Positions 33,227 through 64,000 are shown, counted from the stretch's first letter. The stretch is DNA of 64,000 nt from Macrostomum lignano (GCA_002269645.1 NIVC01002005.1:130050-194049), one strand, 5' to 3'. The notes: generated by a model from the letters alone, not told the origin. A program made the numbers and translations.

Positions 33227-36200
33227 GATTTCTGGAACTGAGAGCATTGCTTGTAATAAATAATTTTTTAAGAAATTTTATTATTTTTTGTTACATTATG
33301 AGGTACAAAGGCAAGGGAAAAACTAAATACAATAATCAATAAAAGAAAATAAAGCAACATATGTATCCATGGGTACAGATCTCTGACAATACTATATATC
33401 TTGTGTACAGCATGTTGCAGCATTTGGCATTTGAAAAAAAGATTAAAAGTATATCCCACATATTACATACTTAGAACTATTTAATTTTTATCAAAAAGTT
33501 CCAACTCAACATCTCATTATTCTCATTAAAGTCTAGACTTTTATTGCTTGTCTATTGTTTTGTATATAATGTATTATTTCTATATTTTCCTATTGCTGTT
33601 GTATATTTTGGCATTTTTCTTATTGCTATAGCTTGTCTATAGTGAAGTTTGAAAATTGTAGACTACAATAAGTGAACAAGAGCTTGAGCAATAAATAAGC
33701 TCTAAACTTAAGGTTAAGCCATAATAATTCAAATTTTCTTTTTAATTTTTATAATTTTTGTATTTTTAGTATATTCTAATGTCAATAATAAGCAGACCAC
33801 TGAAAGTAAACTAATGCAAGTAGAAATGCATGCAAAAATATCTGCATTATATATTGACAGATTTTTTTATCTTGAAGAAAGGTGGGATAGCTATAATGGC
33901 TCTTATTACAATAAGAGCACCTTTTAGTGTCTTAGTATTGTCAAAACACAACACGCGGCCAACTTTAAGACCTGGCTCACTGACTGTTACAAAGAAAAAT
34001 GACTCCATTATCAAGGTTGCACTAAATGAAGTGGCTGCCCTTAAGTCTTTTTATACCAATACATATATGTATTGTATTGTAACATTAGACAATTGACTTG
34101 TGCTTTGCTTGACTATATGCTTAATCATAGTAGTATTAATAAGAATTTTTCTTTGAGAAGATAATTTAAATCAATGAAGCCTAGATTCAAGATAGACTTC
34201 CCTAATGTTTTAGGGAACTACTATTAGGAACTACTAATAAGAACTAATAGGAAACTACTCAAGTTTTAGAATGCATACCAAATAATTCTAGTTTAGGCCT
34301 ATGCCTATATAGCATTTTCTAAAGTATAGATTAATATCAATGCAAATGCTTTTGAATAAGAATGCCTTTGAAGAGTGACTTTATTTTAATCTATAGTGCA
34401 AGATGGGTATATAAAAAAAGTTTCTTTTGTAGAATATACTAAGGCTAGCCATTGTAAATGTTATACATAATTCATTTTTGCAAGGGTCTTTTCATTGAAC
34501 ATGTTGCATCATTAGCGATCCTACAGTTTTCCACTTTTAATTATTTTTGGCTTTTTTTCTACATTTTAGCTAAGCTGCAACGGCTAGTCCTGCACCTGCA
34601 CCAAAGACAGTCATCCCACCTGCAGAAATTGAACCTGCCAATGCATTGGCTGCCTTAGATGTCAGTCTTTGGGAGCTGGTATTGGAGATATTAATATACC
34701 TCCAAGAGTTTTTATGGCGCCGGCTATTCCAAGAGTGTCAATTCAGGAACATGTTGTATTGGATATGCCATTATTATCCATGTAAACTGTTGTGACCATC
34801 ATGAGTGACTATTATATAAGTTTATCATCATTTCTTATTCCTGCTATGCCGTTATTTTTTGAAAAAGCTAAAAAAAAATTAAAAGCGGAAAACTGTAGAA
34901 TTGCCATATCATCATATATGTTGGCCTCACTATTGTATAGGCGGTATAGCAATAGCCTATTATATGCATTTACAAGTTCATAACAAGACCTTGTGAATTT
35001 ATAAATGGTTAAATTATTAATGTTTACATTAGGCCTATTTGTAGAGCTATCAGCTATTGTAATATTTTTGCATAATACATTGTATAGTACTTAATTACAT
35101 AAAAATTATTATTTTAAAAAATTATATTAAATCTTTGTTATATTTTTTCTACAGTTTAACTTAAGTAGGCCCTATAAAAATTGCACAATTGGCTATTAAG
35201 TATAAAAATTGCCAAGTAAAAATTAAGTAGAATGTATGTAGAAACTTTGTAAAGAAGATTACTGCAAATAGGCTCCTTCCTACTAGCCTTCTTCAAAATT
35301 CATTTTACGAACTAGAACTATTAGGTAAAAAATTTTGAGGTCGGGGGGGGTTTGAAAACTATTCTCTGACTGGGCTTCTTGAAATTCGTTCGTTCTCGTC
35401 CGTTCGAATCGGTGCGCTTTGTCGTTTCAAACAAACTTAACGAAGATTTCGGCTTGTAGATGACGGGGAGCTCCGCTGCTGAGTTACTCTCAGGCTCAGG
35501 GGGAGGGTAGCTGTGGTCGCGGCTGAGCGGTCTAGTATGCCGACGTTGAGGAGGCCGAATGCAGAGATTTGTAGCCGATGAGGGGCACTTCAAAATAAAC
35601 TAAAGTTTCTCGAGAGTGTTACTAATAGTAGTAGGTCGCTGCCACCACCGCGATTTTACGCGGGAAAAGCTCTAAAGCTGGAAACTAGCTCGAGTTTGCT
35701 CTAGCGCTTCTCGATAGACCTCTAAGGGTCAAAATAAAGTGCTTCCGAGGTCACGAAGTTAAGATACCGTTTCACACACAGAACTAAATGGGCCGGTATA
35801 AATATTTGGCCGAAAACTAGGTAATTATTATTATTAGGCGGCACTAAGTTAAGTAGCAAGATTAAGTATAACAAAACTAGCTTAATTATTAGACTTAAAT
35901 TGGTGGACGAGGAGCTGGTCGGGTCGGGATACTGGGCTTACAAGATAGGGCCTCTCGTAGTGGTCTGAGTCGGGTCGGCGGGATTCCTTGGAGTTCGGGC
36001 AAAGGACACGAGAGTCTGGCTGGAAAGGCGGGGCGCAGACTCTTAAATTAGGTTCTTAGGAACCACCGGGCGGAAGCGGGTTACCCCGGGTGGGACCAAA
36101 GAGACACACGGTGGGGAGAGGGGAGGGTACACCGGGTGGTGACGACTAAACACCGGGTGGACCCTATGGAAAACGCAGTAAAACAAAAATTAGCCAGGGG

Positions 36201-37549
36201 GTGGGAAGAAAATTACATTTGCGTAAAACGCTTTCCGCGCAGGGAAAGTGACGTCAATGTTCGGAAACCACTGAGTAAAATCATCCACCCCGTGGAAAAT
36301 GAGGTTACATTCAGTGGGAGGTAGTGGGAGGCCTCGCCTACCACAATTTAATTCGCTGGGTATTCTAGGAAAAAATTGCAGTACTAACTTAAACAATTTT
36401 TATGATATTTGAAAAAAGGATTTTTGCTTGTGTTCAAAAATGTGTAATTTTGTTTTTGAAAAACAAAAAGTAAAATTAATTTATTCTTTACTATGGCACC
36501 TATGGCTTAGAAAAAATGGAGACCAAAGTTAAGACGTACGCGTATGCATGTTGTTGTTGCATGTTGACTTCGTACGTACAGCTTCCAAGGACTACTCAAG
36601 TAACATATATATAGGACGCTACACTTGAAATCTATAATAAATGTTTTCAAGGCAACTTTTCGCTGAAAAGTACACTACAAAGATAGGTTGTAATTTTTTC
36701 TGCACAAAAATTGTTATTGCTTTTGATAGCTGGAGGCAGATCCAGTGTTCATCTTTTAATATGTTGTGCCTTTCTTATTGCTCCGTATTATTGCTTCTTA
36801 TTGAACGAATATAAATAAAGCTTTTCGTTCAGAAATAGTTTTAAAGGCAGGTTTCACCGAAAAATTCACTGCGGAGATAGGAAACTTCACGATTTTCAAC
36901 ACTAAAACATGATCATGACAGTGATTGAGTCCTCTTACAGTGTCAGAGAAAGTTCTAATGCCACTATTTTGTGTCTCACATGCTGCTCTAACGACGCATT
37001 TATCGATTTTTCATGTTATATTCGTCTTGTAATTATTTTAAACGTTTTTTTTCAAGTGACAGACAAGGACCACTAGAAGTGGTAACAGCTAGTGGTCCTT
37101 GAATTGGTGACAGACTAACTGTCCGACCGCCTATATATACTAACACTGGAAATGCATAAAGCTTTTTTATAGATTGATGTCCGTATAACATAGTCTCATC
37201 CGAAGATGTTATATGTACACCACAAAACCTATATACATGTAGCTATCGTAACGAGTACAAGGATCATTTACCACCCAACAGAAATTACATGCACAGCTGT
37301 AAAGTCCCAATAAAGAATATATATACATGTAGATAGCTAGTACATAGATAGAAATGATGAGGACGCACATGATTTTTCCCAAATCCCGCGCTAGCACATG
37401 GGCTCTAAACTTACTTGCCTACTAACAGTGGGCAATGGGCATTTTTATCCTTTTTCTGCGAATTTTCATAGAATACATAGTATAATCTATACTAGATATA
37501 ATGTCTGGTCATACTAGTAGTCATAATAACATAGGCTAATAACATATGA

Positions 37550-40330
37550 TTGATTTATGGCCGCACCTGTCATCTTTTTACGACCCTGTGGGAACTGATA
37601 GGATCTCTCGGTCACGTGATTCTGGGTAGCAACAAGCTTAGCCAATCAGAAAATTCGGCGCTCATTTTAACAAAACGGCTCAGCCAATCAGAATCGACGT
37701 GTTCCATTATAACAAACTGCGGTCCAGTTGGCGGCTATTTAAACCGGAGTTTTTGGCCCGCTCGGACTCAACTTTGGCTCGGGCCCAGCGCGCAACTTCT
37801 GGTTTCCGGAGCACGACCGTCGTTTCTTGATCCCCGGATTGCGACTTCCCCCCATCATCATCAAGGACGAGTCCCCCGGTCATCAGCAGCGAACATCAAG
37901 TTAAGAGCATCACCTGCTAGCTAACAGCGAAGATTGTGACAGCATCATCCCGAGTCTACAGCTGCAGAGCATCGAGCCGATTCGATCACTGTGGATTACC
38001 TGGTCTCCGGCTGTTGAGTTTCTGATTGGTTGGGTGAGAGGCTACCTAGACTTGCTTGATTGGGTGATCCCTTTTCTGTCCCCTGTTGCAGTAGCTGAAT
38101 TAGGCGCACACTTTTGCTCATTTTGTTCAGTAGTGCTGTTGCTGAGGCAGAAATCATTCAATAATACTGCTAGTAGTCTAAGACTCCAATTCAATCTGAA
38201 GTGTGAAGTGAACTAAGGGGAAGGTTAAATCTAACAGTTATTTTTATCGGTTTTATTTCTTTGTTCGCCGATGGCTCAGATGAGTAGCTAAGCTAGTAGG
38301 CGCCGGTCGCAGTGGACCAATGGCAAGGCAATTCTCAGTCGACCAATCTATCAAATCAGTGAGCAAAACTGCCAGAAGTGCAGAATCGGCGCCAGAGATG
38401 TACTTTGTGCACTCTAGGGTAGCCATTAGCCAAGCGGCTCGGGTAAATGGATCATGCGGTCTCTGAAGTTCGAGTTAGTCTATCATCAGCGCTATGAGAG
38501 GCTAGTTGGCGCGTTGAAGGCCAAAAGTACATATCTTCGTATTTAGCAATGTAATAGTACATGTAGCTACCCCATAGACTCGCCACCGCAAGAATCCCCT
38601 GCACAAGTCCCCTCTGTACCTGCATGGCCAACGCGATCTAGTCCCAGCAGTGTCCCTTATCATCGGCTATGACTTCGAGATTGACAGCAAAAAGACACTA
38701 GTTGGCAGGTAAGTGCAAAGCCCCTTCTAGTCGGAAGCCCGATTTCGAGAGTCCCGGTGTGGTGAGCCAGGGCGCACGGGCTGGTGGCAGCAAGTTAGTT
38801 GATCTGCGGATTAGCTAATTTCTACTTTCAAAATTCTCCCTGCTCGTCTCTCGCTGTCCCTCTCTTAGCTATAGGACCTAGACTGCTCGCCACACGATCA
38901 AGCTACCATGGGGCTGACCATCTGACAGGAGTGGGGGGCCAGGTCTCTAATTGATTTATTTCTGAGCCTGAGGCCCGAAGGCTTTCCTAACAAGGAGCCC
39001 GAAGGTCGAAACCCATCAGAAAGATGCTGTAGAAAGACTTTTAGCGCTTATCTGAAAAAGCTCAGAGAGGGGCAGGAAGTGGCCTCAAGCGGGCGAGGTG
39101 GATTCTAAGGTCTAGCAAAGGGTCTTTAGAAGCGTCTCAGTGCGCGCCTGTCAGAGACGATATGGGTCGCATGGCGGATTTAATCCAGAGTCCAATTTGT
39201 CTTGGCTAAACTATTATCATATCAACATACAATAAGCAATTCTGAGCAGCCAACGGAGAGTCTCTCGTACTCTGCCTCTCCGATGTCTCTATTTGCTTTC
39301 GTTCAACAGTGTACAACTTCATCTGCAGGTGAAGAGTTTAAAAATAGTGATCACTCACTCGAAAGCTCCTACTTCTAGACACTGTAGAACAAGTGCCTAT
39401 AGGTACATGTATGTGCAAAATCAAATATCTCACTGTAGCGGATCCTATTGTGGTTTCAGACGTCTGAACCTTGTAGTTTGGAGGGTAGCTGGCTTTGTTG
39501 AGCGCTAGCGGCGGCCGGCTCCGGTGAACGGTTGCTTCCGTGAGTTCTTAACTTTATCTGTGAGTCGACCAAAAACGATAGGGAATGAGAAGTCTTGACG
39601 TCCTCAAGCTCGGAATTAACAATAGAACGTGCGTCCAAATGAGCAATTTAATTCTCAGAGTTTCTGTAATAGGTCCTCTTGAAGGGCGTCTTCTTCGTGG
39701 GGTCCGAAACGCAACGGGTAACTCAAATTAATCAATATTATCCTAGGATATAACAAGGTCTTTCTCAGATGTGTCGACAACAGCGGCTCTCGTAAAGCAG
39801 CGCAAATCAATAAACTTATTAACGCTAGCAACAGAGAACTTAATCTGTTAAACACTTACCAATTGAACAAGTTTCGACCCTCGGAGACTGGTCTCCTTCT
39901 ATTCTTCTTCAAAGTCTTCTTTGAGACCGTTCCAAGCAGGCTTTAACCTTTGCAACTCGTGCTATACGTCGATCTTCACGAAATTGATTTGTCGTTCGAC
40001 CAATTATCAACCGGTCTGGATATGGAGCCAGTTCAAAATGTAACAAGAGTTAAAAGCGATGACACACCTAGGAGACCGCTTGATAATAATACTGATGGCT
40101 GAAGATCTACGACAACTGGACATCTGAAAGGCATCTCGTTCGCAGAGTCGAGTTATGGCTGAGACTCCTCAGTGATGGCACTGCCCCTAGAACTAATTAG
40201 TCTCTGGCTGTCTCGAGCTCTCAACAGATTGACATTCGCGTAGAACCTCTTGGATCGACAGGTCAGGATACTGCATCACCTGCTGAGAAAAAACAAACGT
40301 TCTGTCGACAAGGTGGAGATTGACGGGGTG
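37550..40330. mobile_element. Unclassified decayed GC-rich element; promoter-like left end (two AGCCAATCAGAA boxes, TATTTAAA) suggests an LTR/retroelement remnant
   Basis: CCAAT boxes near 37640 and 37682, TATA-like box near 37736; broken reading frames on both strands; no RT or integrase motif recognised. Confidence 0.35.
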
Positions 40331-42170: not shown

Positions 42171-43651
42171 TACCAGCCTGCTTACTCGTATCTTGCAGAT
42201 GCTTCAGTCTGTAAATCATTTCCCTCTTTAAAACTGTCCCTAATAAGTCATGTAATTAGACTATTCCGGCTTCATTGGGAACAAGCTTACTTCGTAAAAG
42301 CAATTTTTACAGTTTTGTTGAAAACTGCCGCAGTATTTTTATTATAAACGAGTTATTATAATTACAGGTATGACATCTCTAAGCTAATAATATTTTTTGC
42401 GTAATCTACTCTTTGCAACATTGTTAGACGCTGACCCGAAATCGGGCCATTCCCGTCGGGAACGGGTGTGCTGAGATGATGGTTGATTTGCTATGGACTT
42501 TTGCAAACGCGCAGCCGTTTGCTTCGGGGCTGGCGGGATGACCCGAAATCGGATCATCTATGTAGCTCGTTCAAAGACAGTGCAGATCGGTGAGCGCGTC
42601 CACAGCATCTCCAGCTCCCGATCAGGGATCCGAGCCTCAGCAGCTGCTCTCAAATTGCGCCCCGTGGCTGCGCCCCGACATCACTGGCAGCTGAATCAAA
42701 TTCTCGATACGTCTCAGAGCTTTCCCGTATTCTTAGTCCGTCAGAGCCGCCATTTTGGTGGCCCTCTGACTCAGTGGAGGTTCGCCACCGCCTGCAGCGT
42801 TTTTTTGCAAGACTGGAATCTTCAGCTTCTCTACGCGATCGCTCCGACGTGGTGGAGCGACGTTTGCTCTCAATGCTGGGAGATGGGCGCAGCTCGGCGA
42901 TTACGCGGGTACATCTCTGATGACAGTGCCGTTAACCTAGCAGCTCTTCGGTCTATGTCTGCTTGCCTTTACTCGTACCGTTCTTCTCTTGCTCCTTCTT
43001 TCTTTTGATTCGCCTGCTTTCTTAGAGTTTGGATTGCTCCTTGCTCATTAAATTTATACATGTATTCTCCGTCATCCACGTTCTGCTGTTTCTGTCTTCA
43101 TCAAATTGCCTAAACCCATAGAAAACTTTTTAGCAATCGGCATAAACTTCTACGATTCTGTGTCAGCCCTTAATGATGAGTCTAGTGAATGAAGCTTATT
43201 AATTTATTAACGAATAGTAACAGTTATACAAATTATACAGGTTGTTATACAGAAATCATAATATTTTTACCGAAATATATCAACTGATATGTTTAACTGT
43301 ATGGCTTTTTAAAACGTTCAGATTCTGCAATTTTATCAAACAAAACTTTGCCCAATCTTTATCATGAGAAAGAAAAGCTGCAGTTCAAGGAAACACCAGG
43401 GCTTATAAACTTCAAATATAGGCAGGAAATTGTACCTGACACCCAGCATTCGAATTCGCTTAAAGGCTAAAGCACTATAAATACATTTACTGCACCGGAA
43501 GTGGTCGTCCAGTGGTCTAGCGCGGCGCTCTGATGTGCCACGGCCAGGCGACTGCTACTGCCATCTTCACGATGCATGAAATTGCATAAAAATTCGCTTT
43601 TCAATCAATCATACGAATACTGTATTCAAAAGTACATTTTCTGTTTCTTAG

Positions 43652-43790
43652 AATCAACGGATATATTGCGACAGCGTAGCGGTGTTCGAACCAGCCATTC
43701 TGGGTTTTCAAGCCAATATTATCCAGCCAATTACAAAATTACTTGGAGCTTCGATATCCCAGAAGGCTACATTTTAACAATAAAATGTTG
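43652..43790 (+). pseudogene. Orphan partial CUB exon (paralog of the CUB2 exon)
   Basis: ttag|STDILRQRSGVRTSHSGFSSQYYPANYKITWSFDIPEGYILTIK versus ATEIIRQRSGVRRSHPDVGSYRNNYKKAWSIYVP; similarity ends mid-domain. Confidence 0.7.
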
Positions 43791-45228
43791 GCTGAAGACC
43801 ATTGATAATGTGAGCACTCCTGCGTCCCCGATTAAACGGTTGAGTTGGTGAAACACATTCAAGGATCTCTAGAAGTTTCAGTTGTGCGACAGTAACTTTT
43901 AGTGATCCTTGATTGCATTATAGACGATGCAAAATATAGCTTACTGCAAAATACATTTGAAACTCACCCGCAGGTGATGGAAAACACGAGCACCAACTCA
44001 AATTGCGTTGGCACAGTGATTTCACAGTTCTCGGTGTTGCTCAGCTATCGCTCATTGGACGATCGGTCATTGAATGCTCACTGCTAAATAGCAGTACTTC
44101 TGTGCTACAGCTGCACCTGCCGAATCTTGGTTAGTTAGTTTGTTCAGTAGAAATTATTGTACCGAGATTTCAACCCTTCTTTAAAAAAACGCCTAAATAA
44201 AAATGCCTAAATAATGCCTAAATAAACAAATGACACTATACATGCATCAGTTGTTATTCGTAACTTTTTGCAATTAAAAGTTTACACTGCGAATGACGTG
44301 GTAGTCTAGCATAAAGTCGCCGAGAGGCTACAAACTTCTTGGAAAAAATTATACACCATAAGTTGGTGGCTGAGTGTACAGGCTGCAGGCTTCAGGCAAC
44401 AAGAATGGAATGGAAAGTTAAACGAAGAAAGATAAACAGACGATGCTGTTAAATGTCATACATGCATAATTTTTGCATCCAAACGGTTTTTATTAAAGAG
44501 AGAATTCCCGTAAAGACATCTGTACAATCATAAAACTTAAAAATTCGTAAGGTTCGGAATTGTGAGTAAACTCTTTCCTACTCAGAGCTTAAAAAACCTT
44601 GCGCTTGTATGAGTGAGCCTTAAGTTATATTCCAAAGAATGATTTGTTTGTCTGTAGGTAGCTCTTAGATAAATATGTAATTGGTTTTGGAAAAAAACGG
44701 CTCAAACAATTTTTACGAAATTTGAACCGTTCGTCCGTTCAAAATTTAGATTAACACCAGTTAATTACCAGTTAATTACCAGTTGATTAGATAAGCGCAA
44801 CAGTCCACATCGATTACAACTCAAAATTCTTTGATAGCAAAAATATCATATCTTCATCATAGAAACACCAGAAACTGTTTCAATGGGTTTTGTTTCTGAG
44901 ATGCAGTGTTGTGAAACAGCAAAATTTCACCTTGATAGTATTCTGTGATTTCAAGATTTGCAATTCAAATTAAATTTAAATTTAAATTTATAAACTATAG
45001 CAACCAAATAAGCGAAAATTGGGAGTCTTGAGTCAAAATTAGCATATGGAATTCAGATCTGGTTTTATTTACTCCAATTAGAATCAAGCTAAAGTTAATG
45101 TCCTGTTTACTGGAACTTGCTTTACTTCAGTAGAAAGAAGATTTTGGCGCTTAAATATGAAAAGGAACATCGAAACCGCAGTTTTCAGGTTACTCTGCTG
45201 AGCCCTTCAGCTCTACCAGCAGCCTGCG

Positions 45229-48200
45229 ATGAAAACAGACACCAGATTTTTCCATTACATTCAACTCTCTGTCTTTGGCTTGCTATGTTGGTTTCCATTT
45301 TCAGGTAGGTTTTATTCTTTTTTAATCAGAGTCAAAATATGTCGCTCTTGTTATAACGGCGCTCGGTTACTAAACAGAATGCTGCTCCGGTGGGACGCTT
45401 TCCGCGTCATCTGGAACGATCGCATGCCCCTCCTCTGGAGGCCAGTATTCAAACAATTTGGACGTTTCCTGGTCTATTCGACCACGTGGTGTCAGCCGAA
45501 TCCGATTCAGCAAGCTGGATGTGGAGCCATGCTGCGACAAAGTGCTCATTTATGAAAGTGCAACCTCAGCCTCAAACAGCTCAGAGAGGTTTCGACTTGT
45601 GCATGCGAACGCGACTGAGTCTGAGTTCTGGCTGAATGCGCCCTTTGTTGTGAGGTTTCGAAGTGACGGGTCTGTCACGAAATCCGGATTTCGGCTTTCT
45701 TACGAACGCCAGTCAGAGTCGATTCCAGGTGAATTTTATGCTCAACGGAATTATTATAGCTAACACTCTTGTTGACTTTTACTGATTGATTTTGATCTCG
45801 GATGACAAATGGAATTTCAGCTGCTACTGAGATAATTCGGCAGAGAAGCGGTGTCAGACGGAGCCATCCAGATGTCGGGTCCTACCGCAATAACTACAAA
45901 AAAGCTTGGAGTATTTATGTGCCCAGAAATTCCCGTGTTTTCATTCGATTCACAAAGTTCAACACGGAATCTGGCTGCGATTATCTTAGGATATATTCAG
46001 GACTTGTTCCGGGATATCAGCACACGGCTCTGCAAGCGATTTCAGGCAATCATAGAATTCTTCATCCGTCATACACGTTTTCGCATAGCGTTACCCTAAT
46101 TTTCACTACTGACGGCTCTGTTGTCCGTGAAGGGTTCGAATTTGAGTTCAATGTCCGTGAGTGATACAAGACGTCAACAGTATCTGGCAGTTTTTTTTTC
46201 AGTTTTATTTAATTCAGAAGTTAAACTGTTCAGTGCAGAAAATATAAGTTAAAAGTTATGCAATCATATGTTTATAATTTCTTTTCTCGGCCAGATACGG
46301 ACAGAGAAGCAACATAGTTTCCATAGTTACTCGTAGTTACATAAATCTGAATAAGTCTCAACATTGTTTATGTTGAGGCAGCTGATTTGTACTACGGATT
46401 ATGCGCCATCGGACTATCGATTATAATGGATAATTAGTTTTAAGCAATGAGAAGAGAACTCTTATAAATTCTCTTTAGATTACATAAATATTATCAACTT
46501 CCACAAAAAATCTTAACGCTGCTACATTTACTCAGTTTGATACTCTTTACAGATGATCATGAATTACTGTGGATCTTTTCAAAATGGACCGGAATGGCCA
46601 TAGGTGGCTCGAAATTCAGTTTTTCACTGCTTTCTATGGATCGAAATGTATCAGCTAGGTGTTACCTAGATCTTGAATGTGGAAGGCAAACTTCGGAGAT
46701 CGCAATGAATTCCGTAAGCCGTGCATTTTTCTGCATTAAATTTTCGAAAAAAGTTATATTACTGGTTGAAGTTATTTGCATAATCTTGCACAGTAAAAGT
46801 AATAGCTTTTGACCTTTCACCGTTTTTTATTTGAAATCGAAGCCAAGTTTACAGAGGTCTCAAATTATTTGAATTGTTTGCAATTCCCTCAGACGATATA
46901 CTCACAGCGAAGATCAGCTGAAAAATTGTACTTATTTTCTGGAATCGTCTCAGATACTGCTGTCTGCATTCGAAACATCACGTGCAGACTCCGTGGCAGC
47001 GGTATGAATGAACTGGTTGAATCGACACCAGCACCTGATGGTAAAACGTATTTAATCATTTTCTGAGACTGTAGATCTGCAAAAAATTTTTGAATAGGTG
47101 AAAGTGTCTGAATTCGACAATTAGCAAAGCCATACAATAACTGTATCAGATTAATGATTATCCTGCTCTAGTTTCCTTCATACATATAAATAACTTTCAG
47201 TTGAGCCAGTTTCACTTGAAATCAGCCTGATAAAGCCTGAGCTGTGGAGCCTCTCAGATGGTTTGATTCGGTTTCGAGCTGTGTCTCAAGCCGAGTGTCG
47301 GCGAGTGAGGCATCGCTGCGAGCTGAGGCTTTTCAATGGAAGCGCAGTCACTGCTGCGCAAGTGAAGCGGGTAAGAATAATGTAATAATGCGTAGTTTAA
47401 ATATTTAGCAAAATATAATATACTTAGAGTAATTGCTATGATAGGCGTGTACAACTAAACGATGTACTGTAGGCCCGTACTGATATGCAGATATACGCAA
47501 TTGTATTTTCCTTCAATTTACAATACCCAGCTAGCGTATTTTCATTCTGATACAATTGCTACGTCAAAACTTCAGCAAGCATCACAGCCACGTATTTCTC
47601 AGTGTGTGAGCAGAGTTCAGACAGACTTTGCTGTGGTGGCTGAGCTCATCGACACAGTCAATTCCACGATACTTTGTTACAAGCAAGCCGGAACAGTCAA
47701 CTATTCTCTGCCGGTTATGCAACTGCGTGAGTTGAGTTAAGATTATGAAATCAATGCATAGATGAATACAAATAATAGGAATTTAGTATATAGAACTTCA
47801 TTAGAACAAGAAGTATATATATTCGCATAACGTCACTTGAATCGAAATTGAACGAAAAATAGCAATCTGACATGCTATTACTTTCTTCATCGTAAAGTTG
47901 ATTCTAAAATAACAATTACTTTATTCGAATATTAGGCGTTTCTGACTCTGTTTTCAAATAAACATGTGAAATTGGCGGCAATTTTGAGAGTTCTAATCAG
48001 GTGAAAAAATGTGTCTTATGTACAGCTGATTTATTCAATGCTAAAAATTGAAAATAAAAGAAAAGATTCTCAGCTCCTTGCAATAATCATTCTCTTATCC
48101 CAGCTGTTCGAGAAATTCAATGGAGATTCCCAGATTCTGCTGGAATCACTGCGGGTGCTCCAGTGCGCATTTTGTTTACAACAGCTGCAAGCATCCGAGG

Positions 48201-50987
48201 CCTGTCAGCGAAATGCCGGCTGCACCAGGAGTGTGGGACTGGAACCATCGAAATCCCAATGCGTGTTGTAAGATAAATCCAAAGTATTTGCCATTTTGCA
48301 CAGTTTTATCAGATGAATGACTATTAAAGTTGATACTTTTTTTCATAATATTTTTGTTCTAGTCATATTGCTCACGTTATTCACACACCATCATTTATGA
48401 AGTTTAGTCGTCGTTTTTCCTGCTACCACAGGATCGAATTGTCTCGACGTCTTTGGGCAAAGTATTCCACTTCTTTGGACGATGGCAGCGTCAAGTGTGC
48501 AGCCGCAACGTATCTTGCGCATTCTCTGTGCCAGGAATGCTCGATTCGGGTGAATTCAGCGAATTACCTCCAGGTATCGCTTTTGAACCAAGGACCTTAG
48601 TGGTCCTGGTATTGAACTCTCTGGATATTACTCGCAGTTTTTTTCATAACGGCTCAAAAAACAAGCGCTATTAATACATTTTGCAACTAAATAGAAATTT
48701 TAATTAATTTCAGTTCAACCAACTGACTTACAGCTTGAGTTGATTAATTCTGAGCTGTGGCTACTCAACGGAGCGATTCAGTTCCGTGCGGTTTCCGAAC
48801 ACGCCTGTCACAGTCTGAGGCACCGCTGTGAGCTGAGGCTTTTAAATGGAAGCGCAGTCACTGCTGTGCAAGTGAAGCGGGTAAGATTAATGTAATAATG
48901 CGTGGATAAAACATTTTACTTGGAATAATATACGGGTTAGTATAATTTCTATAATGCGCTTGTATACTAAAACGAAAAATTTCGTACTAATGCACATATA
49001 TATGCAATTGTATTTCACTTGAATAAATATATCCAGCTAGCGTATTTTTTCGGTTACAATTGCTAAATCAAAACTTCAGCAAGGATCACAGCCACGTACA
49101 TCTCAGTGTGTGAGCAGAGTTCAGACAGACTTTGCTGTGGTGGCTGAGCTCATCGACACAGTCAATTCCACGATACTTTGTTACAAGCAAGCCGGAACAG
49201 TCAACTATTCTCTGCCGGTTATGAAACTGCGTGAGTTGAGTTACAAATATCAAAGTAAAATTTATTTATATGAATATTATAGAGATTTAGTATTTATCAA
49301 TGGATAGCTTGATTAAAACAGGAAGTATGAATTTGCATAACGTAACTACGCCAGAATATAAAAAAAACTATAGAATCTTGCGAGAATCGTGATTAGTTTA
49401 AATCGAAATTCAGCGAAAAATACTACAAAATAATGTGAGTTGTGATTTTATTCGAAATTAAATCGATTTTAGGATAAGAATTCATTTTTCTTCATGCCTT
49501 ATCTATTTGAGTCTTTTAATATACATACAAGTGAAATTTATGGATATAGTGTTTTTATCAATTAAAAAAATGCGTGTCTTATGTACAACTGATTTATTCA
49601 ATGCTAAAAATTGAAAATAAAAGAAAAGATTCTTGCAATGATCATTCCTCTATCCTAGCTGTTCGAGAAATTCAATGGAGATTCCCAGATTCTGCTGGAA
49701 TCACTGCGGGTGCTCCAGTGCGCATTTTGTTTACAACAGCTGCAAGCATCCGAGGCCTGTCAGCGAAATGCCGGCTGCACCAGGAGTGCGGAACTGGAAC
49801 CATCGAAATCCCGATGCGTGTTGTAAGATGAAAAATCAAAGTATTTGACACCCAACGCAGGCAAATAAAAAAATATATTTAGACTAAGCTAAACATTAGT
49901 TTGCATCAGATGAAAGCCTATTAAGGTTGATACTTTTTCGTACACTATTCTTGTAGTAGCCATATTGCCCACGTTATTTATACACCATCACTTATGAAGT
50001 TCACTCGTCATTTTTCCTGCTACCACAGGATCGAATCGTCTCGACATCTTTGGGCAAAGTATTCCACTTCTTTGGACGATGGCAGCGTCAAGTGTGCAGC
50101 CGCAATGTGTCTTGCGCATTCTCTGTGCCAGGAATGCTCGGTTCGATTGAATTCAGCCAATTACCTCCAGGTATTGCTGTTGACCTCTCTTGTGATTCAT
50201 TTATTTCATAACAGCTCATAAAAACATGCGTTCTTAATGCATTTACAACCGTTTCTCCGTTTTATTGATTTCAGTTGAACCAAATGACTTACAGCTTAAG
50301 TTGATTGATCCTGAGCTGTGGCTACTCAACGGAGCAATTCAGTTCCGTGCGGTTTCCGAACACGCCTGTCCCAGTGTGAGGCACCGCTGTGAGCTGAGGA
50401 CGGCTACTAACTATTCGATTCCCGCGACGCTAATAAAGAAGGTTGTTTTTGGCTGTTGGCAGCATTATGTAGCTCGCTATTTGTGCAAGATAGTATGCTT
50501 TGCTTAACTTCAGGATGTCTCGAAGCCCACCGGGTCGCGGTGCTTCAGCTCGTCGCAGTTCTTAGCGTTCGCTCAGCCATCAGACGTAGCGGGTTCCACT
50601 GTGAGATGCCGCCTGCTCAACGGCAGCTCTGCGCTGCTCGTGCTGCCCGAACTGGGTTTTGGTGAGTGTCGCGGCTGATTTCAGATGTTATTCCACGAAG
50701 AAGCAGCCCTGCTTTAAATATCGCCTCCATCAACAGGAGAGACGAGACTGGCGGGAGTCTGGGAGCGGCCACTGCTAGCAGCTTCATCAACAACGGCTGT
50801 TCTCGCCATCATTGCATTGGTAGCAGTGGTGGCCTGCTTTGTGCTGATGAGATCTGGTCAGTGGCCACCTTGGAAAGAATCGCCGGATGCGGCAGTAGTG
50901 AATGAGTCGGTGAAAATGCAACCGACAGTCAGTAACCAATACTATGGCGAATCAGCAGGCATTGTAAGCAGCTTTAATGTGATTTGA
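45229..50987 (+). CDS. Type-I membrane protein, ~962 aa: signal peptide, CUB, CUB, six ~100-aa 4-Cys repeats, TM, 45-aa tail (16 exons)
   Basis: Exons 45229-45304, 45378-45728, 45821-46156, 46553-46713, 46893-47040, 47201-47370, 47576-47726, 48104-48267, 48432-48573, 48714-48880, 49080-49230, 49659-49822, 50029-50170, 50275-50441, 50514-50661, 50737-50987. All GT-AG and phase-compatible, 2889 nt, no internal stop. CUB motifs YSNNLDVSWSI/FRSDGSVTKSGF and FTTDGSVVREGF; TM VLAIIALVAVVACFVLM. Confidence 0.85.
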
Positions 50988-51283
50988 GGCACCAGACTTC
51001 ATCATATTTTCAGCAATGTCAAATTATTAATCATGCTTGCATCCGACTTTCAGCCTGATGACTCAACCGGAGTTTACGTCACGTGAAAAAGCCACCAAAA
51101 ATGACTAATTACTACATACAGAAGACGATCGATACGAGCTAAAAAACCTAAAAATCTAGGGCAGTAGCTTTTTCTAAAATTTTTAACCTAGGTCTATTGC
51201 TGCTATAGTTTTACTTTGCTTAAAAGTCAGTAATTACTTTCAACATTAGGTGTATATGTATCTGATTAATTCGGCAACTTTTG

Positions 51284-57829: not shown

Positions 57830-58245
57830 ACTGGTCCCAGTGTCCTTCACCAGACTCTTTATTGCCAGCCTCAAAATGCAGAAAAGTCTTTGTGTCACCG
57901 GACTGTCGGTAGATCACCCACGAGTTCCGCACAAGCATCGCAAGAAGATGAAATCCTAGCGTGTGGAACCAGCGCATGCTCTTTCGGTTTGCGAGATACG
58001 GGTGCATTGAGACGTCCAAATGGTTAATCCCGGCCATGCTGGAAGAGTAGGCAAGCACGCTGGCAGGCTTTTGCACCACCTGCTTTGCAACACCGCGAAC
58101 CTGAACGCATTCTGCCTTGCCCGCCGTGTCCAGCAAATGCAGAGTCTTGATGCTGCTTAGCTTCTTGTCGACAAATTTACACGCCAGGAGGTCACTTGAA
58201 TGTGCGAATGCAGATGAAGTTTGAAGTTTGGTGACAGCCTGCAAA
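57830..58245 (-). pseudogene. Second piggyBac transposase fragment
   Basis: DLLACKFVDKK...KPASVLAYSSSMAGINHLDVSMHPYLANRKSMRWFHTLGFHLL; close nucleotide match to 41385-41610. Confidence 0.88.
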
Positions 58246-58784
58246 TAAGCTGAAGCTGTTGTATTGTTACTCGTATATAAGTGTCTTCACAGAAACTCTC
58301 CGTTTAAAAAAAGTTAGGATGGAAAATTTATGCATGCATGACATATGATAGCATCGTCTGTTTATTCTTCTCGTCTACCTTTTTATTCCATTTTTGTTGC
58401 CTTCAAACTTCAGCCTGTACACTCAGCAATCAAGGTGATAGCGTAAAAAAAGTCAAATAATTTTCTGCCTCGACTCTCGGTGACTGTACGCTAGAATACC
58501 ATTTTTCATACTGGATATTTGTACTTGCGAAAAGTTACGAATGACAACTTAGTTTCCTAATGCAGCAGCTCTGTGTTGCAACAGTTAGTTTTTTAATTTT
58601 AATTTCGTTGCTAACGGAACAACAGGTACCGTCGAAAAGCTTGCGATAAGATGAAATGTCCGTTTTACTTTATTTGCATGTTTCCTTTGCAAAACTGCAG
58701 ACGTGTACGATACGTGCACACGCATCGTTTTCTGTCGTCTAGAAGCAACAATTTACCATACGGTAATTTAAAGGCTGCGTGCAT

Positions 58785-59343: not shown

Positions 59344-61499
59344 AAGCCGTGATGTTCCCTTTTTTTCAAATAATATAGATGAACCAAAGTTTTGCTGGAA
59401 AAACAAAAGACACGCAGAATTTTTATGCACTAGTTTGGTGTTAATTTGTAACTAGATTGTTTTAGCTGCAGAACCTGAAGTTTTTAAAAGGCCATACATG
59501 TATTGTCGGTTAAACTAATCAGCTGATGCATTTCACTAAAAAATAATATTACGATTTCTGTATAACAATCTAAATAACTGTTACAGTGTATCTATTCGTT
59601 AACGAAATTTATAAACTCAATTTACTAGACTCATCCTAAACGCTGACTTCGAATAGTAGAAGTTATTTAGGGTTAGGCGAAGTGACGAAGACTGTTATTA
59701 TAGCATAACGTGAAAGACAGCGAGTATAAATGAACGAGGCCAGCAGACATAGACCGAAGAGCCGCTAGGTTCTGACCTTCGCTAGGTTACCGGCACTGCC
59801 ATCAGAGATGTACCCGCGAAATCGCCGAGCTGCGCCAATCTCCGAGCATTGAAAGCAGATGTCGCTCCACCACGGCGGAGCGAGTGCGTAGAGAAGCTGA
59901 AAGTTTCTGATGTGTCCCTTATTACCCGACTTATGGTAATCAAAGAACACTCACTTCTAGCTCAATAGCTAGGCAGCCCAGTAAGTCAATTAAAGGTACT
60001 TCTTACGTTGACGTCGCTTGGAGATATCTCTTCTGTAGTCTTCGAGTAGATCTCGCTTGTCTCTATGTGATCTCGTAGATCAGGCGCCTTGATTCTTCAG
60101 TTGCTCTGGTCCTGGTTCCTCTTGTACTTCCGATAAGTTCCTCCGGCCGGTATCTTCAGTCAGGACCAATCAGAGGCCTCGTATCAACAATGGGTACCCT
60201 GCGCCGAACAGCGGTTTGAATTAAGCCTCCTTCTTCTAGCAGTGCCTTTATGCACTCTAGGTATGGCTCCGGAAACCACTGATAGTCCTCTAAGATCTAT
60301 CAGGGGCAGTCCTTCTGGAGACTGCAACCAATGGAGTCTAAACAGACTCAAGAGTCTCAACAGACTCAAATAGACTCAAGTCTCAATAGACTTGAGCGAG
60401 ACGTCTCTAACACAACGGGCGCAAATAAGGAAGGCTTACCGCAACAACTCGACCGAGTCTCGATTGACTTGGTGATCAGGAAGTCCTCCTAAGGCTTCCT
60501 CTTCGGAGCTTCTCCTCTCGTCGGGAGTTGGCTCCTGGTCCGCTTCGGACCGCTTGTATTTATAGGCAACTTTTTGATCCAAAATAGCATCATTACAAAC
60601 CACGTGTTGCGCTAAAAGGGGAAAATGGCTCATGGCGTATCATTTTGGTAACATCTTTTCCTGGTAGCGTGATTCATTCAAAGCTTAGGCGCACATGCGT
60701 GTACTTACTTACTTATAGTAGCATTATACGATTATCTTCTTTTAACCTTTTTTAACGGGAGGTAGAACACTCTACATTTCCATTCCGGTCTTGCGAAACA
60801 AACGCTGCAGGCGGTGGCGAACCTCCACTGAGTCAGAAGGCCACCAAAATGGCGGCTCTGACGGACTAAGAATACGGGAAAGCTCTGAGACGTATCGAGA
60901 ATTAGATTCAGCTGCCAGAGATGTCGGGGCGCAATTTGAGAGCGGCTGCTGAGCTCGGACCCATGACCGGGAGCTGGAGCTGGTGTGGATGCGCTCACCG
61001 ATCAGCACTGTCTTTGAACGAGCTACATAGATGGCCCGATTTCGGGTCATCCCGCCAGCCCGAAGCGAACGGCCCGCGTTTGCAAAAGTCTATGGCAAAT
61101 CAACCATCATCTCAGCACACCCGTTGCCGACGGGAATGGCCCGATTTCGGGTCAGCGTCTAACAATGTTGCAAAGAGTAGATTACGCAAAAAAATATTAT
61201 TAGCTTAGAGATGTCATACCTGTAATTATAATAACTCGTTTATAATAAAAATACTGCGGCAGTTTTCAACAAAACTGTAAAAATTGCTTTTACGAAGTAA
61301 GCTTGTTCCCAATGAAGCCGGAATAGTCTAATTACATGATTTATTAGGGACATTTTTAAAGAGGGAAATGATTTACAGACTGGAGCATCTGCAAGATACG
61401 AAAAAGTAAGCTGGTACAATGGGTAGGTATTTAGGTAGGTAGGTAGGTAGGTAGGTAGGTAGGTAGGTAGGTAGGTAGGTAGGTAGGTAGGTAGGTAGG

Positions 61500-61527: not shown

Positions 61528-62543
61528 CTGAAAATTATTTGGCTTTTTTTACGCTATCACCTTGATTGCTGAGTGTACAGGCTGAAGTTTGAAGGCAACG
61601 AAAATGGAATAAAAAGGTAGACGAGAAGAATAAACAGACGATGCTGTCATATGTCATGCATGCATAAATTTTCCATCCTAACTTTTTTATGCGTAGCGTT
61701 TCTGTGAAGACACTTATATACGAGTAACAATACAACAGCTTCAGCTTATAGGTTCAAATTTGTAAATTCTGTCCTACTCAAAGCTAAAAAACACGTATGA
61801 TCATTGTATGAGCATTATGTCGTGTTCCATTTTAATTAACTAAAAATAAGTTGTTTTGCAGTTGGAAGACATGTGATGTGTTTTAGGAAAAAACGACTCC
61901 ACAGATTCATTAAACATTCTATCTGTTCTAAAATTAGCAAAGCATTCGACTTAAGCGACAGAAGTCCTCGTACACTGTCTTAACAAGTTTTCATTGCTTT
62001 CCATAAAGCACCATCCAACCCAGTCAATAGTTTTATTTTCACCTGAGATTTCTTGTAAGACCATTATAGTTTAAATGTACTACACTTCGCTATGCTTTGA
62101 TAGCAAATTATGAAGATATGAAATCAATTCTCTATATTGATATGACCAAAACACCAGAAATACTTCAGGGGGTGATTTCTGAAATGAAGTGTTGAGATAC
62201 GGCACACTTTTACCTTCAAGGCATTCTGTATTACAATATTTATGATTTATTACGTTCTATATGGATAAACTCGAAACCAAAATCAGCGAAAATTGGAAGT
62301 CTTGTGTCAAAATTAGCCTCGAAATTAGTGGAAGAGTTGCCTAGATATTGCCAGATTTGGTTTTATATACTTTAATTAAAAGCTGTCTAAATTTGATGTT
62401 CGGCCTGTTTACTGGAAGTTGATTTAATTTAGTGGAAAGAAGATTAACGGGCATAAATACGAACAGGAACACTGAAACAGCAGTTTTCCGCTTACTAGCT
62501 CGTATGCCATGCCCGCAGCGCCCTGCAGCTGAACCAGACTGCG

Positions 62544-64000
62544 ATGAAAACATGCACCAGATTTTTTCGTTACTTTCAACTCATTGTGTTTGGCTTGTTA
62601 TTTTGGTTTTCTCCATCCGGTACGTTTATTCTGTTTTGATTAGAGTCAGAAAAAACCAGTTTGCTCTTGCTAAAACGTGGGTTACTAAAAACGCAGAGTG
62701 CTGTTCCGGTAGGACGCTTTACTCGTCATCTGGAACGATCGCGTGCCCCTCCTCTGGAGGCCAGTATTCAAACAATTTGGATGTTTCCTGGTCTATTCGA
62801 CCACGTGGTGTCAGCCGAATCCGATTCAGCAAGCTGGATGTGGATTCGTGCTGCGACAAAGTTTTAATTTATGAAAGCGCAATCTACGCATCAAGCAGCT
62901 CAGAGAAGTTTCGACTTGTGCATGCAAACGCGACTGAGTCTGAGTTCTGGGTGAATTCGCCCTTTGTTGTGCGGTTTCGAAGTGACGGGTTTCACACGAG
63001 ATCCGGATTTCGGCTTTCTTACGAACGCCAGTGGGAATCGATTCCAGGTGAATTTTATGCCTTACGTTTATAACAGCACTCTGGTTGACTTTTGCTGATT
63101 TATTTGATCTCGGATGAAAATGGAATTTCAGCTGCTACTGAGGTCATTCGGCAGAGAAGCGGTGTCAGACGGAGCCATCCAGATGTCGGGTCCTACCGCA
63201 ATAACTACAAAAAGCTTGGAGTATTTACGTGCCCAGAAATTCCCGTGTTTTCATTCGATTCACAAAGTTCAACACGGAATCTGGCCGCGACTATCTTAGG
63301 ATATATTCAGGACTTGTTCCGCGATATCAACACACGGCTCTGCAAGCGATTTCAGGCAATCATAGAATTCTTCATCCGTCATACACGTTTTCGCATAGCG
63401 TTACCCTAATTTTCACTACTGACGGCTCTGTTGTGTGAAGGGTTCGAATTTGAGTTCAATGTCCGTGAGTGATACAAGACGTCAACAGTATCTGGCAGTT
63501 TTTTCAGTTTTTTTCAGAAGTTAAACTGTTCAGTGCAGAAATATAAGTTAAAAGTTATGCAATCTTATGTTTATAGTTTCTTTTCTCGGCCAGATACGGA
63601 CAGAGAAGCAACATAGTTTCCATAGTTACTCGTAGTTACATAATCTGAATAAGTCTCAACATTGTTTATGTTGATGCAGGTTATTTGTACTACGGATTAT
63701 GCGCCATCGCCTATCGATTATAATGGATAATTAGTTTTAAGCAATGAGAAGAGAACTCTTATAAATTCTCTTTAGATTACATAAATATTATCAACTTCCA
63801 CAAAAAATCTTAACGCTGCTACATTTACTCAGTTTGATACTCTTTACAGATGATCATGAATTACTGTGGATCTTTTCAAAATGGACCAGAATGGCCATAG
63901 GTGGCTCGAAATTCAGTTTTTCACTGCTTTCTATGGATCGAAATGTATCAGCTAGGTGTTACTTAGATCTTGAATGTGGAAGGCAAACTTCGGAGATCGC
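62544..64000 (+). pseudogene. Paralog of the CUB/4-Cys-repeat receptor with a frameshifted CUB2 exon; continues beyond the window
   Basis: Signal exon 62544-62619 and CUB1 exon 62697-63047 are intact. The CUB2 exon from 63132 has A6>A5 (about 63209-63213), a TAA at 63407-63409 and a 2-bp deletion near 63435. The next exon starts at about 63850. Confidence 0.8.

What the first reader, a model, noticed from the sequence alone, without database searches (positions are those of the whole stretch)
45229..50987. Unrecognised single-pass receptor: CUB-CUB plus six alternating 4-Cys domains, each built from two exons
Seen: 16 phase-compatible exons splice to ~962 aa, most of it invisible in the ORF track. 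After two CUB domains come six ~100-aa modules of two alternating types. Type X has W.F...G...SA.C.L..ECG..EI.M | ...K.F.F.G...VC.RN..C. Type Y has PELW...G.I.FRAVS...C...RHRCELR | ...S.C.S...F.......ST..C. Each module has 4 Cys, phase-1 borders and an internal phase-0 intron, and many N-glycosylation sequons are present. A TM helix and a 45-aa tail with SNQYY follow. Established: phase 1-1 symmetry is typical of shuffled extracellular modules. Inference: types X and Y are a lineage-specific beta-rich fold forming a stalk for the CUB head, giving a duplicating, length-variable surface receptor family (recognition, immunity or adhesion).
Basis: partly seen in the sequence, partly recalled or inferred. 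Interest (0 to 1): 0.85.

Follow-up and report, generated by a model that had tools for sequence, protein, structure and literature searches.

The report
Flatworm CUB plus Ig-like surface receptor
This is a real, already annotated but uncharacterised Macrostomum lignano gene for a single-pass membrane glycoprotein with two CUB domains on a stalk of six repeat modules; the modules match no known sequence family but are predicted to be ordinary immunoglobulin-like beta-sandwiches.

Summary
Sixteen GT-AG exons with the stated phases splice into one ORF.

The organism is the flatworm Macrostomum lignano. A 759-aa copy derived from transcripts (BOX15_Mlig014562g1) joins the CUB and repeat exons in one mRNA.

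Pfam sees only the two CUB domains. Exhaustive HMMER searches find the X and Y modules only in about 10 M. lignano protein clusters. The minimal family plan is signal peptide, 2-4 CUB, one X-Y pair, a TM helix, and a tail ending in VY(V/L)(T/N).

AlphaFold2 on an 8-paralog alignment gives two all-beta domains (pLDDT 80). Foldseek matches them to tandem Ig-domain chains (E about 1e-6), not to ZP modules. So X and Y are lineage-restricted sequence families but not a new fold.

Module number varies (2, 4 or 6). Y2 is a Y3/Y1 chimera, the footprint of an unequal crossover. Exons of the duplicated units are 94-98% identical against 72-82% for their introns, so both are under constraint.

Function is inferred only: a CUB-headed receptor or co-receptor with tyrosine motifs in its tail. 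Interest is moderate.

The parts
45229..45304 (+). Exon 1: start codon and signal peptide (aa 1-25), ends in phase 1
   Evidence: GT donor. The hydrophobic N-terminus is identical in P0001 and P0002.
45378..45728 (+). Exon 2: CUB domain 1 (aa 26-142), phase 1-1
   Evidence: Pfam CUB. Aligns to cubilin CUB5-8 (3KQ4) and PCPE-1 with the acidic E/D/D positions kept.
45821..46156 (+). Exon 3: CUB domain 2 (aa 143-254), phase 1-1
   Evidence: Pfam CUB best stretch at aa 162-252. Alignment to cubilin.
46553..47040 (+). Exons 4-5 (46553-46713, 46893-47040): module X1 (aa 255-357), 4 Cys, internal phase-0 intron
47201..47726 (+). Exons 6-7 (47201-47370, 47576-47726): module Y1 (aa 358-464), 4 Cys
48104..48573 (+). 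Exons 8-9 (48104-48267, 48432-48573): module X2 (aa 465-566)
   Evidence: The duplicate partner is X3.
48714..49230 (+). Exons 10-11 (48714-48880, 49080-49230): module Y2 (aa 567-672). It is a chimera: Y3-like 5' of about 48830 and Y1-like 3' of about 48845.
   Evidence: Sliding identity switches from 90-97% to Y3 to 90-97% to Y1 inside the RHRCELR coding stretch.
49659..50170 (+). Exons 12-13 (49659-49822, 50029-50170): module X3 (aa 673-774), duplicate of X2
   Evidence: exons 94-98% identical, introns 72-82%
50275..50661 (+). Exons 14-15 (50275-50441, 50514-50661): module Y3 (aa 775-879), the membrane-proximal Y. It is the counterpart of the single Y in paralogs P0028 and P0030.
   Evidence: Modelled together with X3.
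50737..50963 (+). Exon 16: conserved juxtamembrane motif VWERPL, TM helix (about aa 897-917), and the tail with SNQYY. It ends at donor 50963|GT in phase 0.
51054..51086 (+). It carries the family-invariant V-Y.
47201..50274 (+). Two tandem copies of a Y-X unit of about 1.5 kb, introns included (about 47201-48713 and 48714-50274)
   Evidence: The unit is absent from the collinear locus L001.

Best explanation
The locus encodes a type I single-pass, heavily N-glycosylated cell-surface protein of Macrostomum lignano.

Shown:
- Domain order: signal peptide; two CUB domains at the membrane-distal end; six Ig-like beta-sandwich domains arranged as three X-Y pairs; a conserved juxtamembrane motif (VWERPL); one TM helix; a 48-aa cytoplasmic tail.
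- X and Y are two unrelated-looking sequence families, each with four invariant cysteines.
- The ancestral family plan has a single X-Y pair next to the membrane.
- In this gene the stalk was lengthened by unequal homologous crossover between Y modules. This left a Y3/Y1 chimeric module (Y2) and a second copy of X.
- Both duplicate units are under purifying selection.

Inferred mechanism:
- The CUB pair is the ligand-binding head. Both CUBs keep the Glu/Asp/Asp positions that coordinate Ca2+ and clamp a basic ligand side chain in cubilin-type CUBs.
- The disulfide-stapled, glycosylated Ig-like stalk sets how far the head projects. It may add lateral or homophilic contacts.
- The two conserved tail tyrosines are an NxxY-like site (SNQYY here, NPVY in a paralog) and the invariant terminal VY(V/L)(T/N). 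They would dock PTB/SH2-type or endocytic adaptors.
- On this reading the protein acts as a signalling or endocytic receptor, or as a co-receptor.
For: - Gene model and phases. The 17-exon correction and identity to an independent call.
- RNA-derived sister models joining CUB and X/Y: P0002, P0028 and P0030 come from GenBank Mlig_3_7. That annotation is built from a genome-guided RNA-seq assembly (PMC5730564).
- The exon plan is conserved in L001 and in the divergent paralog at L002.
- CUB: Pfam E 5.5e-17. Alignment to cubilin 3KQ4 (E 2.7e-11) and PCPE-1 keeps the acidic positions.
- All 8 Cys of the X-Y unit are invariant across four paralog groups.
- AF2 model: pLDDT 80.3, pTM 0.65, all-beta.
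- Foldseek: top 50 PDB hits are all tandem Ig-domain chains, E 2e-6 to 4e-5, probability 1.0.
- TM segment and sequons.
- Tail: V-Y is invariant and an NxxY-like motif is visible.
- Chimeric Y2.
- Duplicate units: exons 94-98% identical, introns 72-82%.
- The 4-module copy lies at a collinear locus.
Against: - There are no expression, localisation or binding data for this gene. The gene ID is absent from the searchable literature.
- The Ig-like assignment rests on a predicted structure built from only 8 paralogous sequences. A first model from 5 sequences was poor (pLDDT 44.7).
- Foldseek TM-scores are low (0.33-0.43), because the relative orientation of the two domains differs from the targets. 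The PDB is also saturated with antibodies.
- No Ig family profile matches, even at E<=10.
- The CUBs lack most canonical CUB cysteines: CUB1 has 5 at unusual positions and CUB2 has 1.
- Ca2+ binding is inferred from alignment alone.
- The tail motifs are short and could be fortuitous.
Confidence: 0.6

Rival explanations
1. It is an auxiliary subunit or co-receptor rather than an autonomous receptor. Like NETO/SOL-1/LEV-10 or neuropilin, the CUB pair would bind another membrane protein (an ion channel or a signalling receptor) in cis. The protein would then tune or cluster that partner.
For: Single-pass CUB-CUB proteins with short tails typically work this way (established knowledge of NETO1/2, C. 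elegans SOL-1 and LEV-10, and neuropilins). The tail is only 48 aa and has no catalytic domain. The acidic CUB triad is kept.
Against: None of those families has an Ig-like stalk. None of their extra domains (LDLa, FA58C, MAM) is present. No partner is known. The rapid change in module number is unusual for a channel auxiliary subunit.
Confidence: 0.25
2. It is a fast-evolving recognition or adhesion molecule, for example in mating, gamete or self/non-self recognition. Specificity would lie in the lineage-specific Ig-like modules, and copy and module number would be under diversifying pressure.
For: The family is restricted to M. lignano in all searches. There is a tandem paralog in the same window. 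Module number varies as 2, 4 or 6. Precedent exists for cryptic Ig-like families in invertebrate recognition loci: Hydractinia Alr (PMC9546547).
Against: The duplicated units show purifying, not diversifying, change: 7 synonymous against 6 non-synonymous codon differences in 152 codons, with exons far more conserved than introns. No polymorphism or expression data are available. The databases hold no other Macrostomum proteomes, so 'lineage-specific' may simply mean 'genus-wide'.
Confidence: 0.12
3. The X-Y unit is a degenerate zona pellucida (ZP-N + ZP-C) module. The protein would then be a CUZD1-like CUB-CUB-ZP-TM precursor that is cleaved and polymerises into extracellular filaments.
For: The architecture is superficially the same as CUZD1: two CUBs, then a module of about 210 aa with 8 invariant Cys immediately before the TM helix.
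Against: No Zona_pellucida Pfam hit appears, even at E<=10. No ZP structure is among the top 50 Foldseek hits, which are all canonical Ig pairs. There is no R-x-K/R-R furin site between Y3 and the TM (sequence). The cysteine spacing within X (C-6-C...C-6-C) is unlike the ZP-N pattern, where C1 is at the start and C4 at the end of the domain. That ZP-N pattern is from my own knowledge.
Confidence: 0.03
4. It is a decaying or mis-assembled copy: a pseudogene, or an assembly artefact that inflates the repeat number.
For: The M. lignano genome is highly duplicated (PMC5730564). The neighbouring tandem copy does carry frameshifts. The 6-module form is so far supported only by genomic gene calls (P0001; the fragmentary P0017 also contains Y2).
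Against: The 965-codon ORF is intact across 17 exons with all splice sites canonical. The two units differ at many intron positions, so they are not an assembly stutter. Exons are conserved well above introns. An older assembly's model (P0017) contains the same chimeric Y2 sequence.
Confidence: 0.05

Closest known systems
CUZD1 (CUB and zona pellucida-like domains 1) and related CUB-ZP membrane proteins
   Same: Signal peptide, two N-terminal CUB domains, a cysteine-rich module of about 200-260 aa directly before a single TM helix, a short tail, and heavy glycosylation.
   Different: The membrane-proximal module here is predicted as two Ig-like sandwiches that match antibody-type pairs, not ZP-N/ZP-C. 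There is no ZP Pfam hit and no furin site. The unit is repeated three times.
Neuropilins; NETO1/2; C. elegans SOL-1, LEV-10 and M02D8.5 (single-pass CUB co-receptors)
   Same: Type I topology with a membrane-distal CUB-CUB head and a short non-catalytic tail. The Ca2+-type acidic triad is kept. A second Pfam hit is to the M02D8_5-like CUB model (PF23062, E 4.9e-9).
   Different: There are no FA58C, MAM or LDLa domains. The stalk is built from six Ig-like domains of two novel sequence families.
Hydractinia Alr family: 'unusual IgSF genes' recognised only by structure prediction (PMC9546547)
   Same: Lineage-restricted single-pass proteins whose extracellular domains escape Ig sequence profiles but fold as Ig-like domains in AlphaFold. 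The paralogs sit in tandem clusters and the tails carry tyrosine motifs.
   Different: Alr proteins have no CUB head. Their role in allorecognition is demonstrated genetically. Nothing comparable is known here, and there is no sequence similarity.
Classical IgSF adhesion molecules such as NCAM (gene structure)
   Same: Phase-1 introns flank each Ig-like domain, and each domain is split into two exons by an internal intron. This is established knowledge of IgSF gene structure.
   Different: No I-set, C2 or V-set profile matches. Each domain has four cysteines instead of the canonical B-F pair. Neither the canonical Trp nor the Y-x-C motif is evident.
CDCP1 (CUB domain-containing protein 1)
   Same: A single-pass glycoprotein with a CUB-type ectodomain and a short tail whose tyrosines are the signalling output. 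This comparison is from my own knowledge.
   Different: There is no detectable sequence relation beyond CUB. CDCP1 has no X/Y-type modules.

Membership tests
CUB domain (Pfam PF00431) | Profile match above the curated gathering score | tested here: met
   62.5 bits against a 21.4-bit cut-off, E 5.5e-17, two stretches. phmmer hits cubilin 3KQ4 at E 2.7e-11 and PCPE-1.
CUB domain (Pfam PF00431) | Four canonical cysteines forming C1-C2 and C3-C4 disulfides | tested here: not met
   CUB1 has Cys at aa 27, 28, 42, 77 and 78. The canonical C2 position reads S (dvsWsi against nCtWhi) and C4 is absent. CUB2 has a single Cys, at 195. Cys-poor CUBs are known, so this does not exclude membership.
Ca2+-binding CUB subset (cubilin, C1r/s, MASP, PCPE type) | Conserved Glu / Asp / Asp triad that coordinates Ca2+ | tested here: inconclusive
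   In the HMMER alignment to cubilin and PCPE-1 the acidic positions are occupied in both CUBs: ldvE, ccD and rsD in CUB1; ntE, cDy and ttD in CUB2. This comes from alignment only. No structure or binding was tested.
Immunoglobulin-like beta-sandwich fold | Two-sheet Greek-key sandwich of 7-9 strands, detectable by structure comparison | tested here: met
   AF2 model at pLDDT 80.3, with about 8 strands per module. Foldseek gives 796 PDB hits at E<=1e-3, and the top 50 are all tandem Ig chains at probability 1.0. This is a predicted structure, not an experimental one.
Immunoglobulin superfamily (sequence-defined: V, C1, C2 and I sets) | Match to an Ig family profile | tested here: not met
   No Pfam Ig family matches at E<=10 for any of 8 X-Y units or for the full protein. 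No PDB sequence hit. UniProt labels the fragment P0026 'Ig-like domain-containing', but that label could not be reproduced with the libraries available here.
Immunoglobulin superfamily (sequence-defined: V, C1, C2 and I sets) | Canonical B-strand to F-strand disulfide with a core Trp in strand C | not testable with these tools
   Model coordinates are not exposed, so the disulfide partners could not be read. In X the spacing is C38-6-C44 ... C78-6-C84. That spacing is compatible with either a 38-84/44-78 or a 38-78/44-84 pairing (arithmetic).
Zona pellucida module (CUZD1-like) | ZP-N/ZP-C profile or fold match | tested here: not met
   No Zona_pellucida hit. No ZP structure in the Foldseek top 50.
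Zona pellucida module (CUZD1-like) | Consensus furin cleavage site between the module and the TM helix | tested here: not met
   The linker reads ...LPELGFGETRLAGVWERPLLAASS... and has no R-x-K/R-R.
Neuropilin / NETO / LEV-10 co-receptors | CUB-CUB followed by FA58C+MAM (neuropilin) or LDLa (NETO, LEV-10) | tested here: not met
   Pfam reports only CUB models.
M. lignano CUB-X-Y-TM family (defined here) | Signal peptide, at least 2 CUBs, at least one X-Y unit with 8 invariant Cys, a WE(R/L)PL juxtamembrane motif, a TM helix, and a last mini-exon encoding VY(V/L)(T/N) | tested here: met
   Alignments A2 and A3. Exon maps of L001 and L002. Members are P0002, P0028, P0030 and their relatives.

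The most novel reading that the evidence does not exclude
X and Y are two previously undescribed, Macrostomum-restricted families of four-cysteine Ig-like domains. Together with a CUB head they define a new receptor family. Its ectodomain length evolves by unequal crossover, and it serves a rapidly evolving recognition task such as mating, gamete or self/non-self recognition, or pathogen binding. It would be a flatworm counterpart of the cryptic IgSF recognition families of cnidarians and tunicates.
Probability: 0.12. Interest if true: 0.6.

Novelty: new variant of a known kind. Interest (0 to 1): 0.35.

Why it matters
If the reading is right, it adds two orphan sequence families to the set of 'hidden' Ig-like domains that only structure prediction reveals. 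It also adds a new CUB plus Ig-like single-pass architecture in a genetically tractable regenerative flatworm. The locus gives an unusually clean example of how an extracellular stalk gains or loses domain pairs: a crossover inside a conserved coding stretch leaves a chimeric module. It does not reveal a new fold or a new mechanism, and no function is known yet.

Tried and rejected
1. ZP-module / CUZD1 idea. It was suggested by the CUB-CUB, 8-Cys, TM layout. I rejected it on Pfam, Foldseek and the absence of a furin site.

2. X and Y as diverged copies of one domain. hhalign of the X profile against the Y profile gave probability 0.7% and then 0.4% with the deeper alignment. There is no sequence evidence. 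Only the shared fold class and the equivalent phase-0 intron position hint at common origin.

3. First AF2 run on a 5-sequence alignment. pLDDT was 44.7, the Y part was unfolded, and no Foldseek hit reached E<=1e-3. I discarded it in favour of the 8-sequence run.

4. PDB sequence searches with the X-Y profiles returned nothing meaningful.

5. The only non-Macrostomum hit of the exhaustive search was a bacterial Big_13 repeat protein (P0027, E 3.4e-5, summed over 5 repeats of 'DGTYQFRAVVADAAGN'). I treat it as a short-motif coincidence, because it aligns to the N-terminal strand of Y rather than to the equivalent F-G region.

6. Literature and supplement searches for the gene IDs returned nothing.

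7. Rfam and tRNA scans of the window found no hits.

8. My first exact splice-mapper script failed. I replaced it with exact-match chaining.


Full report
**Observation**

I read 44.8-51.4 kb, translated all frames and assembled the exons by hand. Sixteen exons with AG/GT borders give a continuous 962-codon ORF.

A protein search returned P0001, a 965-aa gene call from this very sequence, identical except at the C-terminus. It also returned P0002, GenBank BOX15_Mlig014562g1 of Macrostomum lignano (759 aa, 86% identity).

Both end in ...GESAGI-PDDSTGVYVT. A 17th mini-exon (51054-51086) supplies the true C-terminus. The gene therefore spans 45229-51086 and encodes 965 aa.

**Is it one gene?**

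The GenBank annotation of assembly Mlig_3_7 is derived from a genome-guided RNA-seq transcriptome, not from ab initio prediction (PMC5730564). P0002, P0028 and P0030 come from that annotation. All three join the CUB exons to X/Y exons, the TM helix and the tail.

Exact-match mapping shows the same exon plan in the P0002 locus (L001, 13 exons) and in the divergent paralog P0030 (L002, 9 exons). The plan is:
- one exon per CUB domain;
- two exons per X and per Y module, with phases 1, 0 and 1;
- a terminal mini-exon.

It still has to be checked for this 6-module copy.

**Domain content**

Pfam recognises only two CUB domains (E 5.5e-17). They align to cubilin CUB5-8 (3KQ4, E 2.7e-11) and to PCPE-1. 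In those alignments the Glu/Asp/Asp positions used for Ca2+ coordination are occupied in both CUBs. Most canonical CUB cysteines are missing.

The six modules are X1 255-357, Y1 358-464, X2 465-566, Y2 567-672, X3 673-774 and Y3 775-879. Each has four Cys. There are 15 extracellular sequons, a TM segment at about 897-917 and a 48-aa tail.

**How widespread are X and Y?**

I ran three word-indexed searches and one exhaustive HMMER search of 1.84 billion representatives with an X-Y profile. They found only M. lignano proteins, plus one bacterial Big_13 repeat protein that I regard as a short-motif coincidence.

The cluster look-up and the sequences define at least four paralog groups. The minimal plan is signal peptide, CUB x2 (P0030) or x4 (P0028), one X, one Y, a TM helix and a tail.

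All eight cysteines of the X-Y unit are invariant across these groups. So are a juxtamembrane WE(R/L)PL motif and a terminal V-Y. An NxxY-like tyrosine lies 10-15 residues upstream of that V-Y: NPVY in P0026, NNSY in P0030 and SNQYY here.

No other Macrostomum proteomes appear to be in these databases. 'Species-specific' therefore cannot be distinguished from 'genus-wide'.

**Fold**

A 5-sequence alignment gave a poor model (pLDDT 44.7), and no Foldseek hit reached E<=1e-3. Adding the divergent paralogs (alignment A2) raised the model of X3-Y3 to pLDDT 80.3 and pTM 0.65. The five models ranged from 69 to 80. The result is two all-beta domains of about eight strands each.

Foldseek against the PDB gave 796 hits at E<=1e-3. 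The top 50 are all two-domain immunoglobulin chains: Fab light chains, TCR, Fc and butyrophilin. Their E-values run from 2e-6 to 4e-5 at probability 1.0, aligned over 210-240 columns. TM-scores are low (0.33-0.43), as expected when the angle between the two domains differs.

No ZP structure appears. That removes my working idea that CUB-CUB, 8-Cys module, TM is a CUZD1-like ZP protein. The absent furin site and the absent Pfam ZP match point the same way.

X and Y are therefore best described as Ig-like sandwiches that escape every Ig sequence profile. They also show no detectable similarity to each other. The gene structure, with phase-1 borders and each domain split by one intron, is the classical IgSF pattern. 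That is established knowledge, NCAM being the standard example. In the model the phase-0 intron falls in the same central strand of both X and Y. This is my inference.

**Origin of the six-module form**

Repeats of about 1.5 kb, introns included, link 47.2-48.6 kb with 48.7-50.2 kb. A sliding comparison shows that Y2 is 90-97% identical to Y3 up to about 48830. It then switches to 90-97% identity with Y1 from about 48845. The switch lies inside the conserved RHRCELR coding stretch. This is the junction expected from an unequal crossover between Y3 and Y1, which adds one Y-X unit.

Between the two units, exons are 94-98% identical and introns only 72-82%, with many indels. There are 7 synonymous and 6 non-synonymous codon differences in 152 codons. 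So the units are not an assembly stutter, the event is not very recent, and both copies are constrained.

The Mlig_3_7 locus L001 is collinear with window 32.1-51.3 kb at 93-98% identity but lacks the unit. Its product has four modules. I could not decide whether L001 never gained the unit or lost it by the reciprocal event.

**Mechanism (inferred)**

The CUB pair would act as a Ca2+-dependent ligand-binding head. The glycosylated, disulfide-stapled Ig-like stalk would set its reach. The two conserved tail tyrosines would serve as docking sites for adaptors or for endocytosis.

The main functional rival is a cis-acting co-receptor or auxiliary subunit, as with NETO, SOL-1, LEV-10 and neuropilin. 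A fast-evolving recognition role is possible but is not favoured by the substitution pattern.

**Novelty**

The gene is already annotated as hypothetical. The CUB part is ordinary and the fold of X and Y is ordinary. What is new:
- two orphan Ig-like sequence families;
- their pairing with a CUB head in a single-pass protein;
- the clearly readable crossover that changes stalk length.

I rate it a new variant of a known kind, of moderate interest.

Noticed in passing
window 62149-64000 (+), running off the window end: A second, tandem family member starts about 11 kb downstream (ATG at 62544). Its promoter-proximal 370 bp, exons and introns align to copy 1 at 87% overall. Its CUB2 exon has a 1-nt deletion (at 63208) and a 2-nt deletion (at 63434), which put a stop codon in frame between them. 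The single CUB2 Cys has also become Arg. Older gene models of this copy (P0018, P0019) skip CUB2 and X1. Identity to copy 1 is mosaic: exons 1-2 differ at 16/76 and 31/351 positions, exons 3-4 at only 7/336 and 2/151. That suggests gene conversion.
   Followed up: partly
window 43594-43785 (+): An isolated fragment encodes the first 44 or so residues of a CUB2-type domain (STDILRQRSGVRTSHSGFSSQYYPANYKITWSFDIPEGYILTIK). It lies 1.4 kb upstream of the start codon, then leaves the CUB pattern and hits a stop. It is conserved at 98.9% in L001. It is probably a relic exon.
   Followed up: partly
window 288-32370: The first half of the window is a patchwork of more than 25 different minisatellite arrays. 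Periods run from 4 to about 250 nt, many arrays are 0.5-1.6 kb long, and GC skew is strong. These arrays account for all the long 'ORFs' listed there.
   Followed up: no
window 35874-39020: A stretch of about 3.1 kb is present in the window but absent from the otherwise collinear Mlig_3_7 locus L001. It is a possible transposon insertion or deletion polymorphism between genome copies.
   Followed up: no
window 44249-44518, 58282-58549 (-), 61562-61690, 57841-58015, 60782-61465: Dispersed repeat copies at 74-93% identity flank both family members. They also occur upstream in L001 and are probably a mobile element.
   Followed up: no
database entries P0017, P0023, P0026: UniProt auto-names for fragmentary older models of this family are misleading: 'CST complex subunit CTC1', 'Glyco_hydro_38C domain-containing' and 'Ig-like domain-containing'. 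Several of those models contain out-of-frame exon translations.
   Followed up: partly
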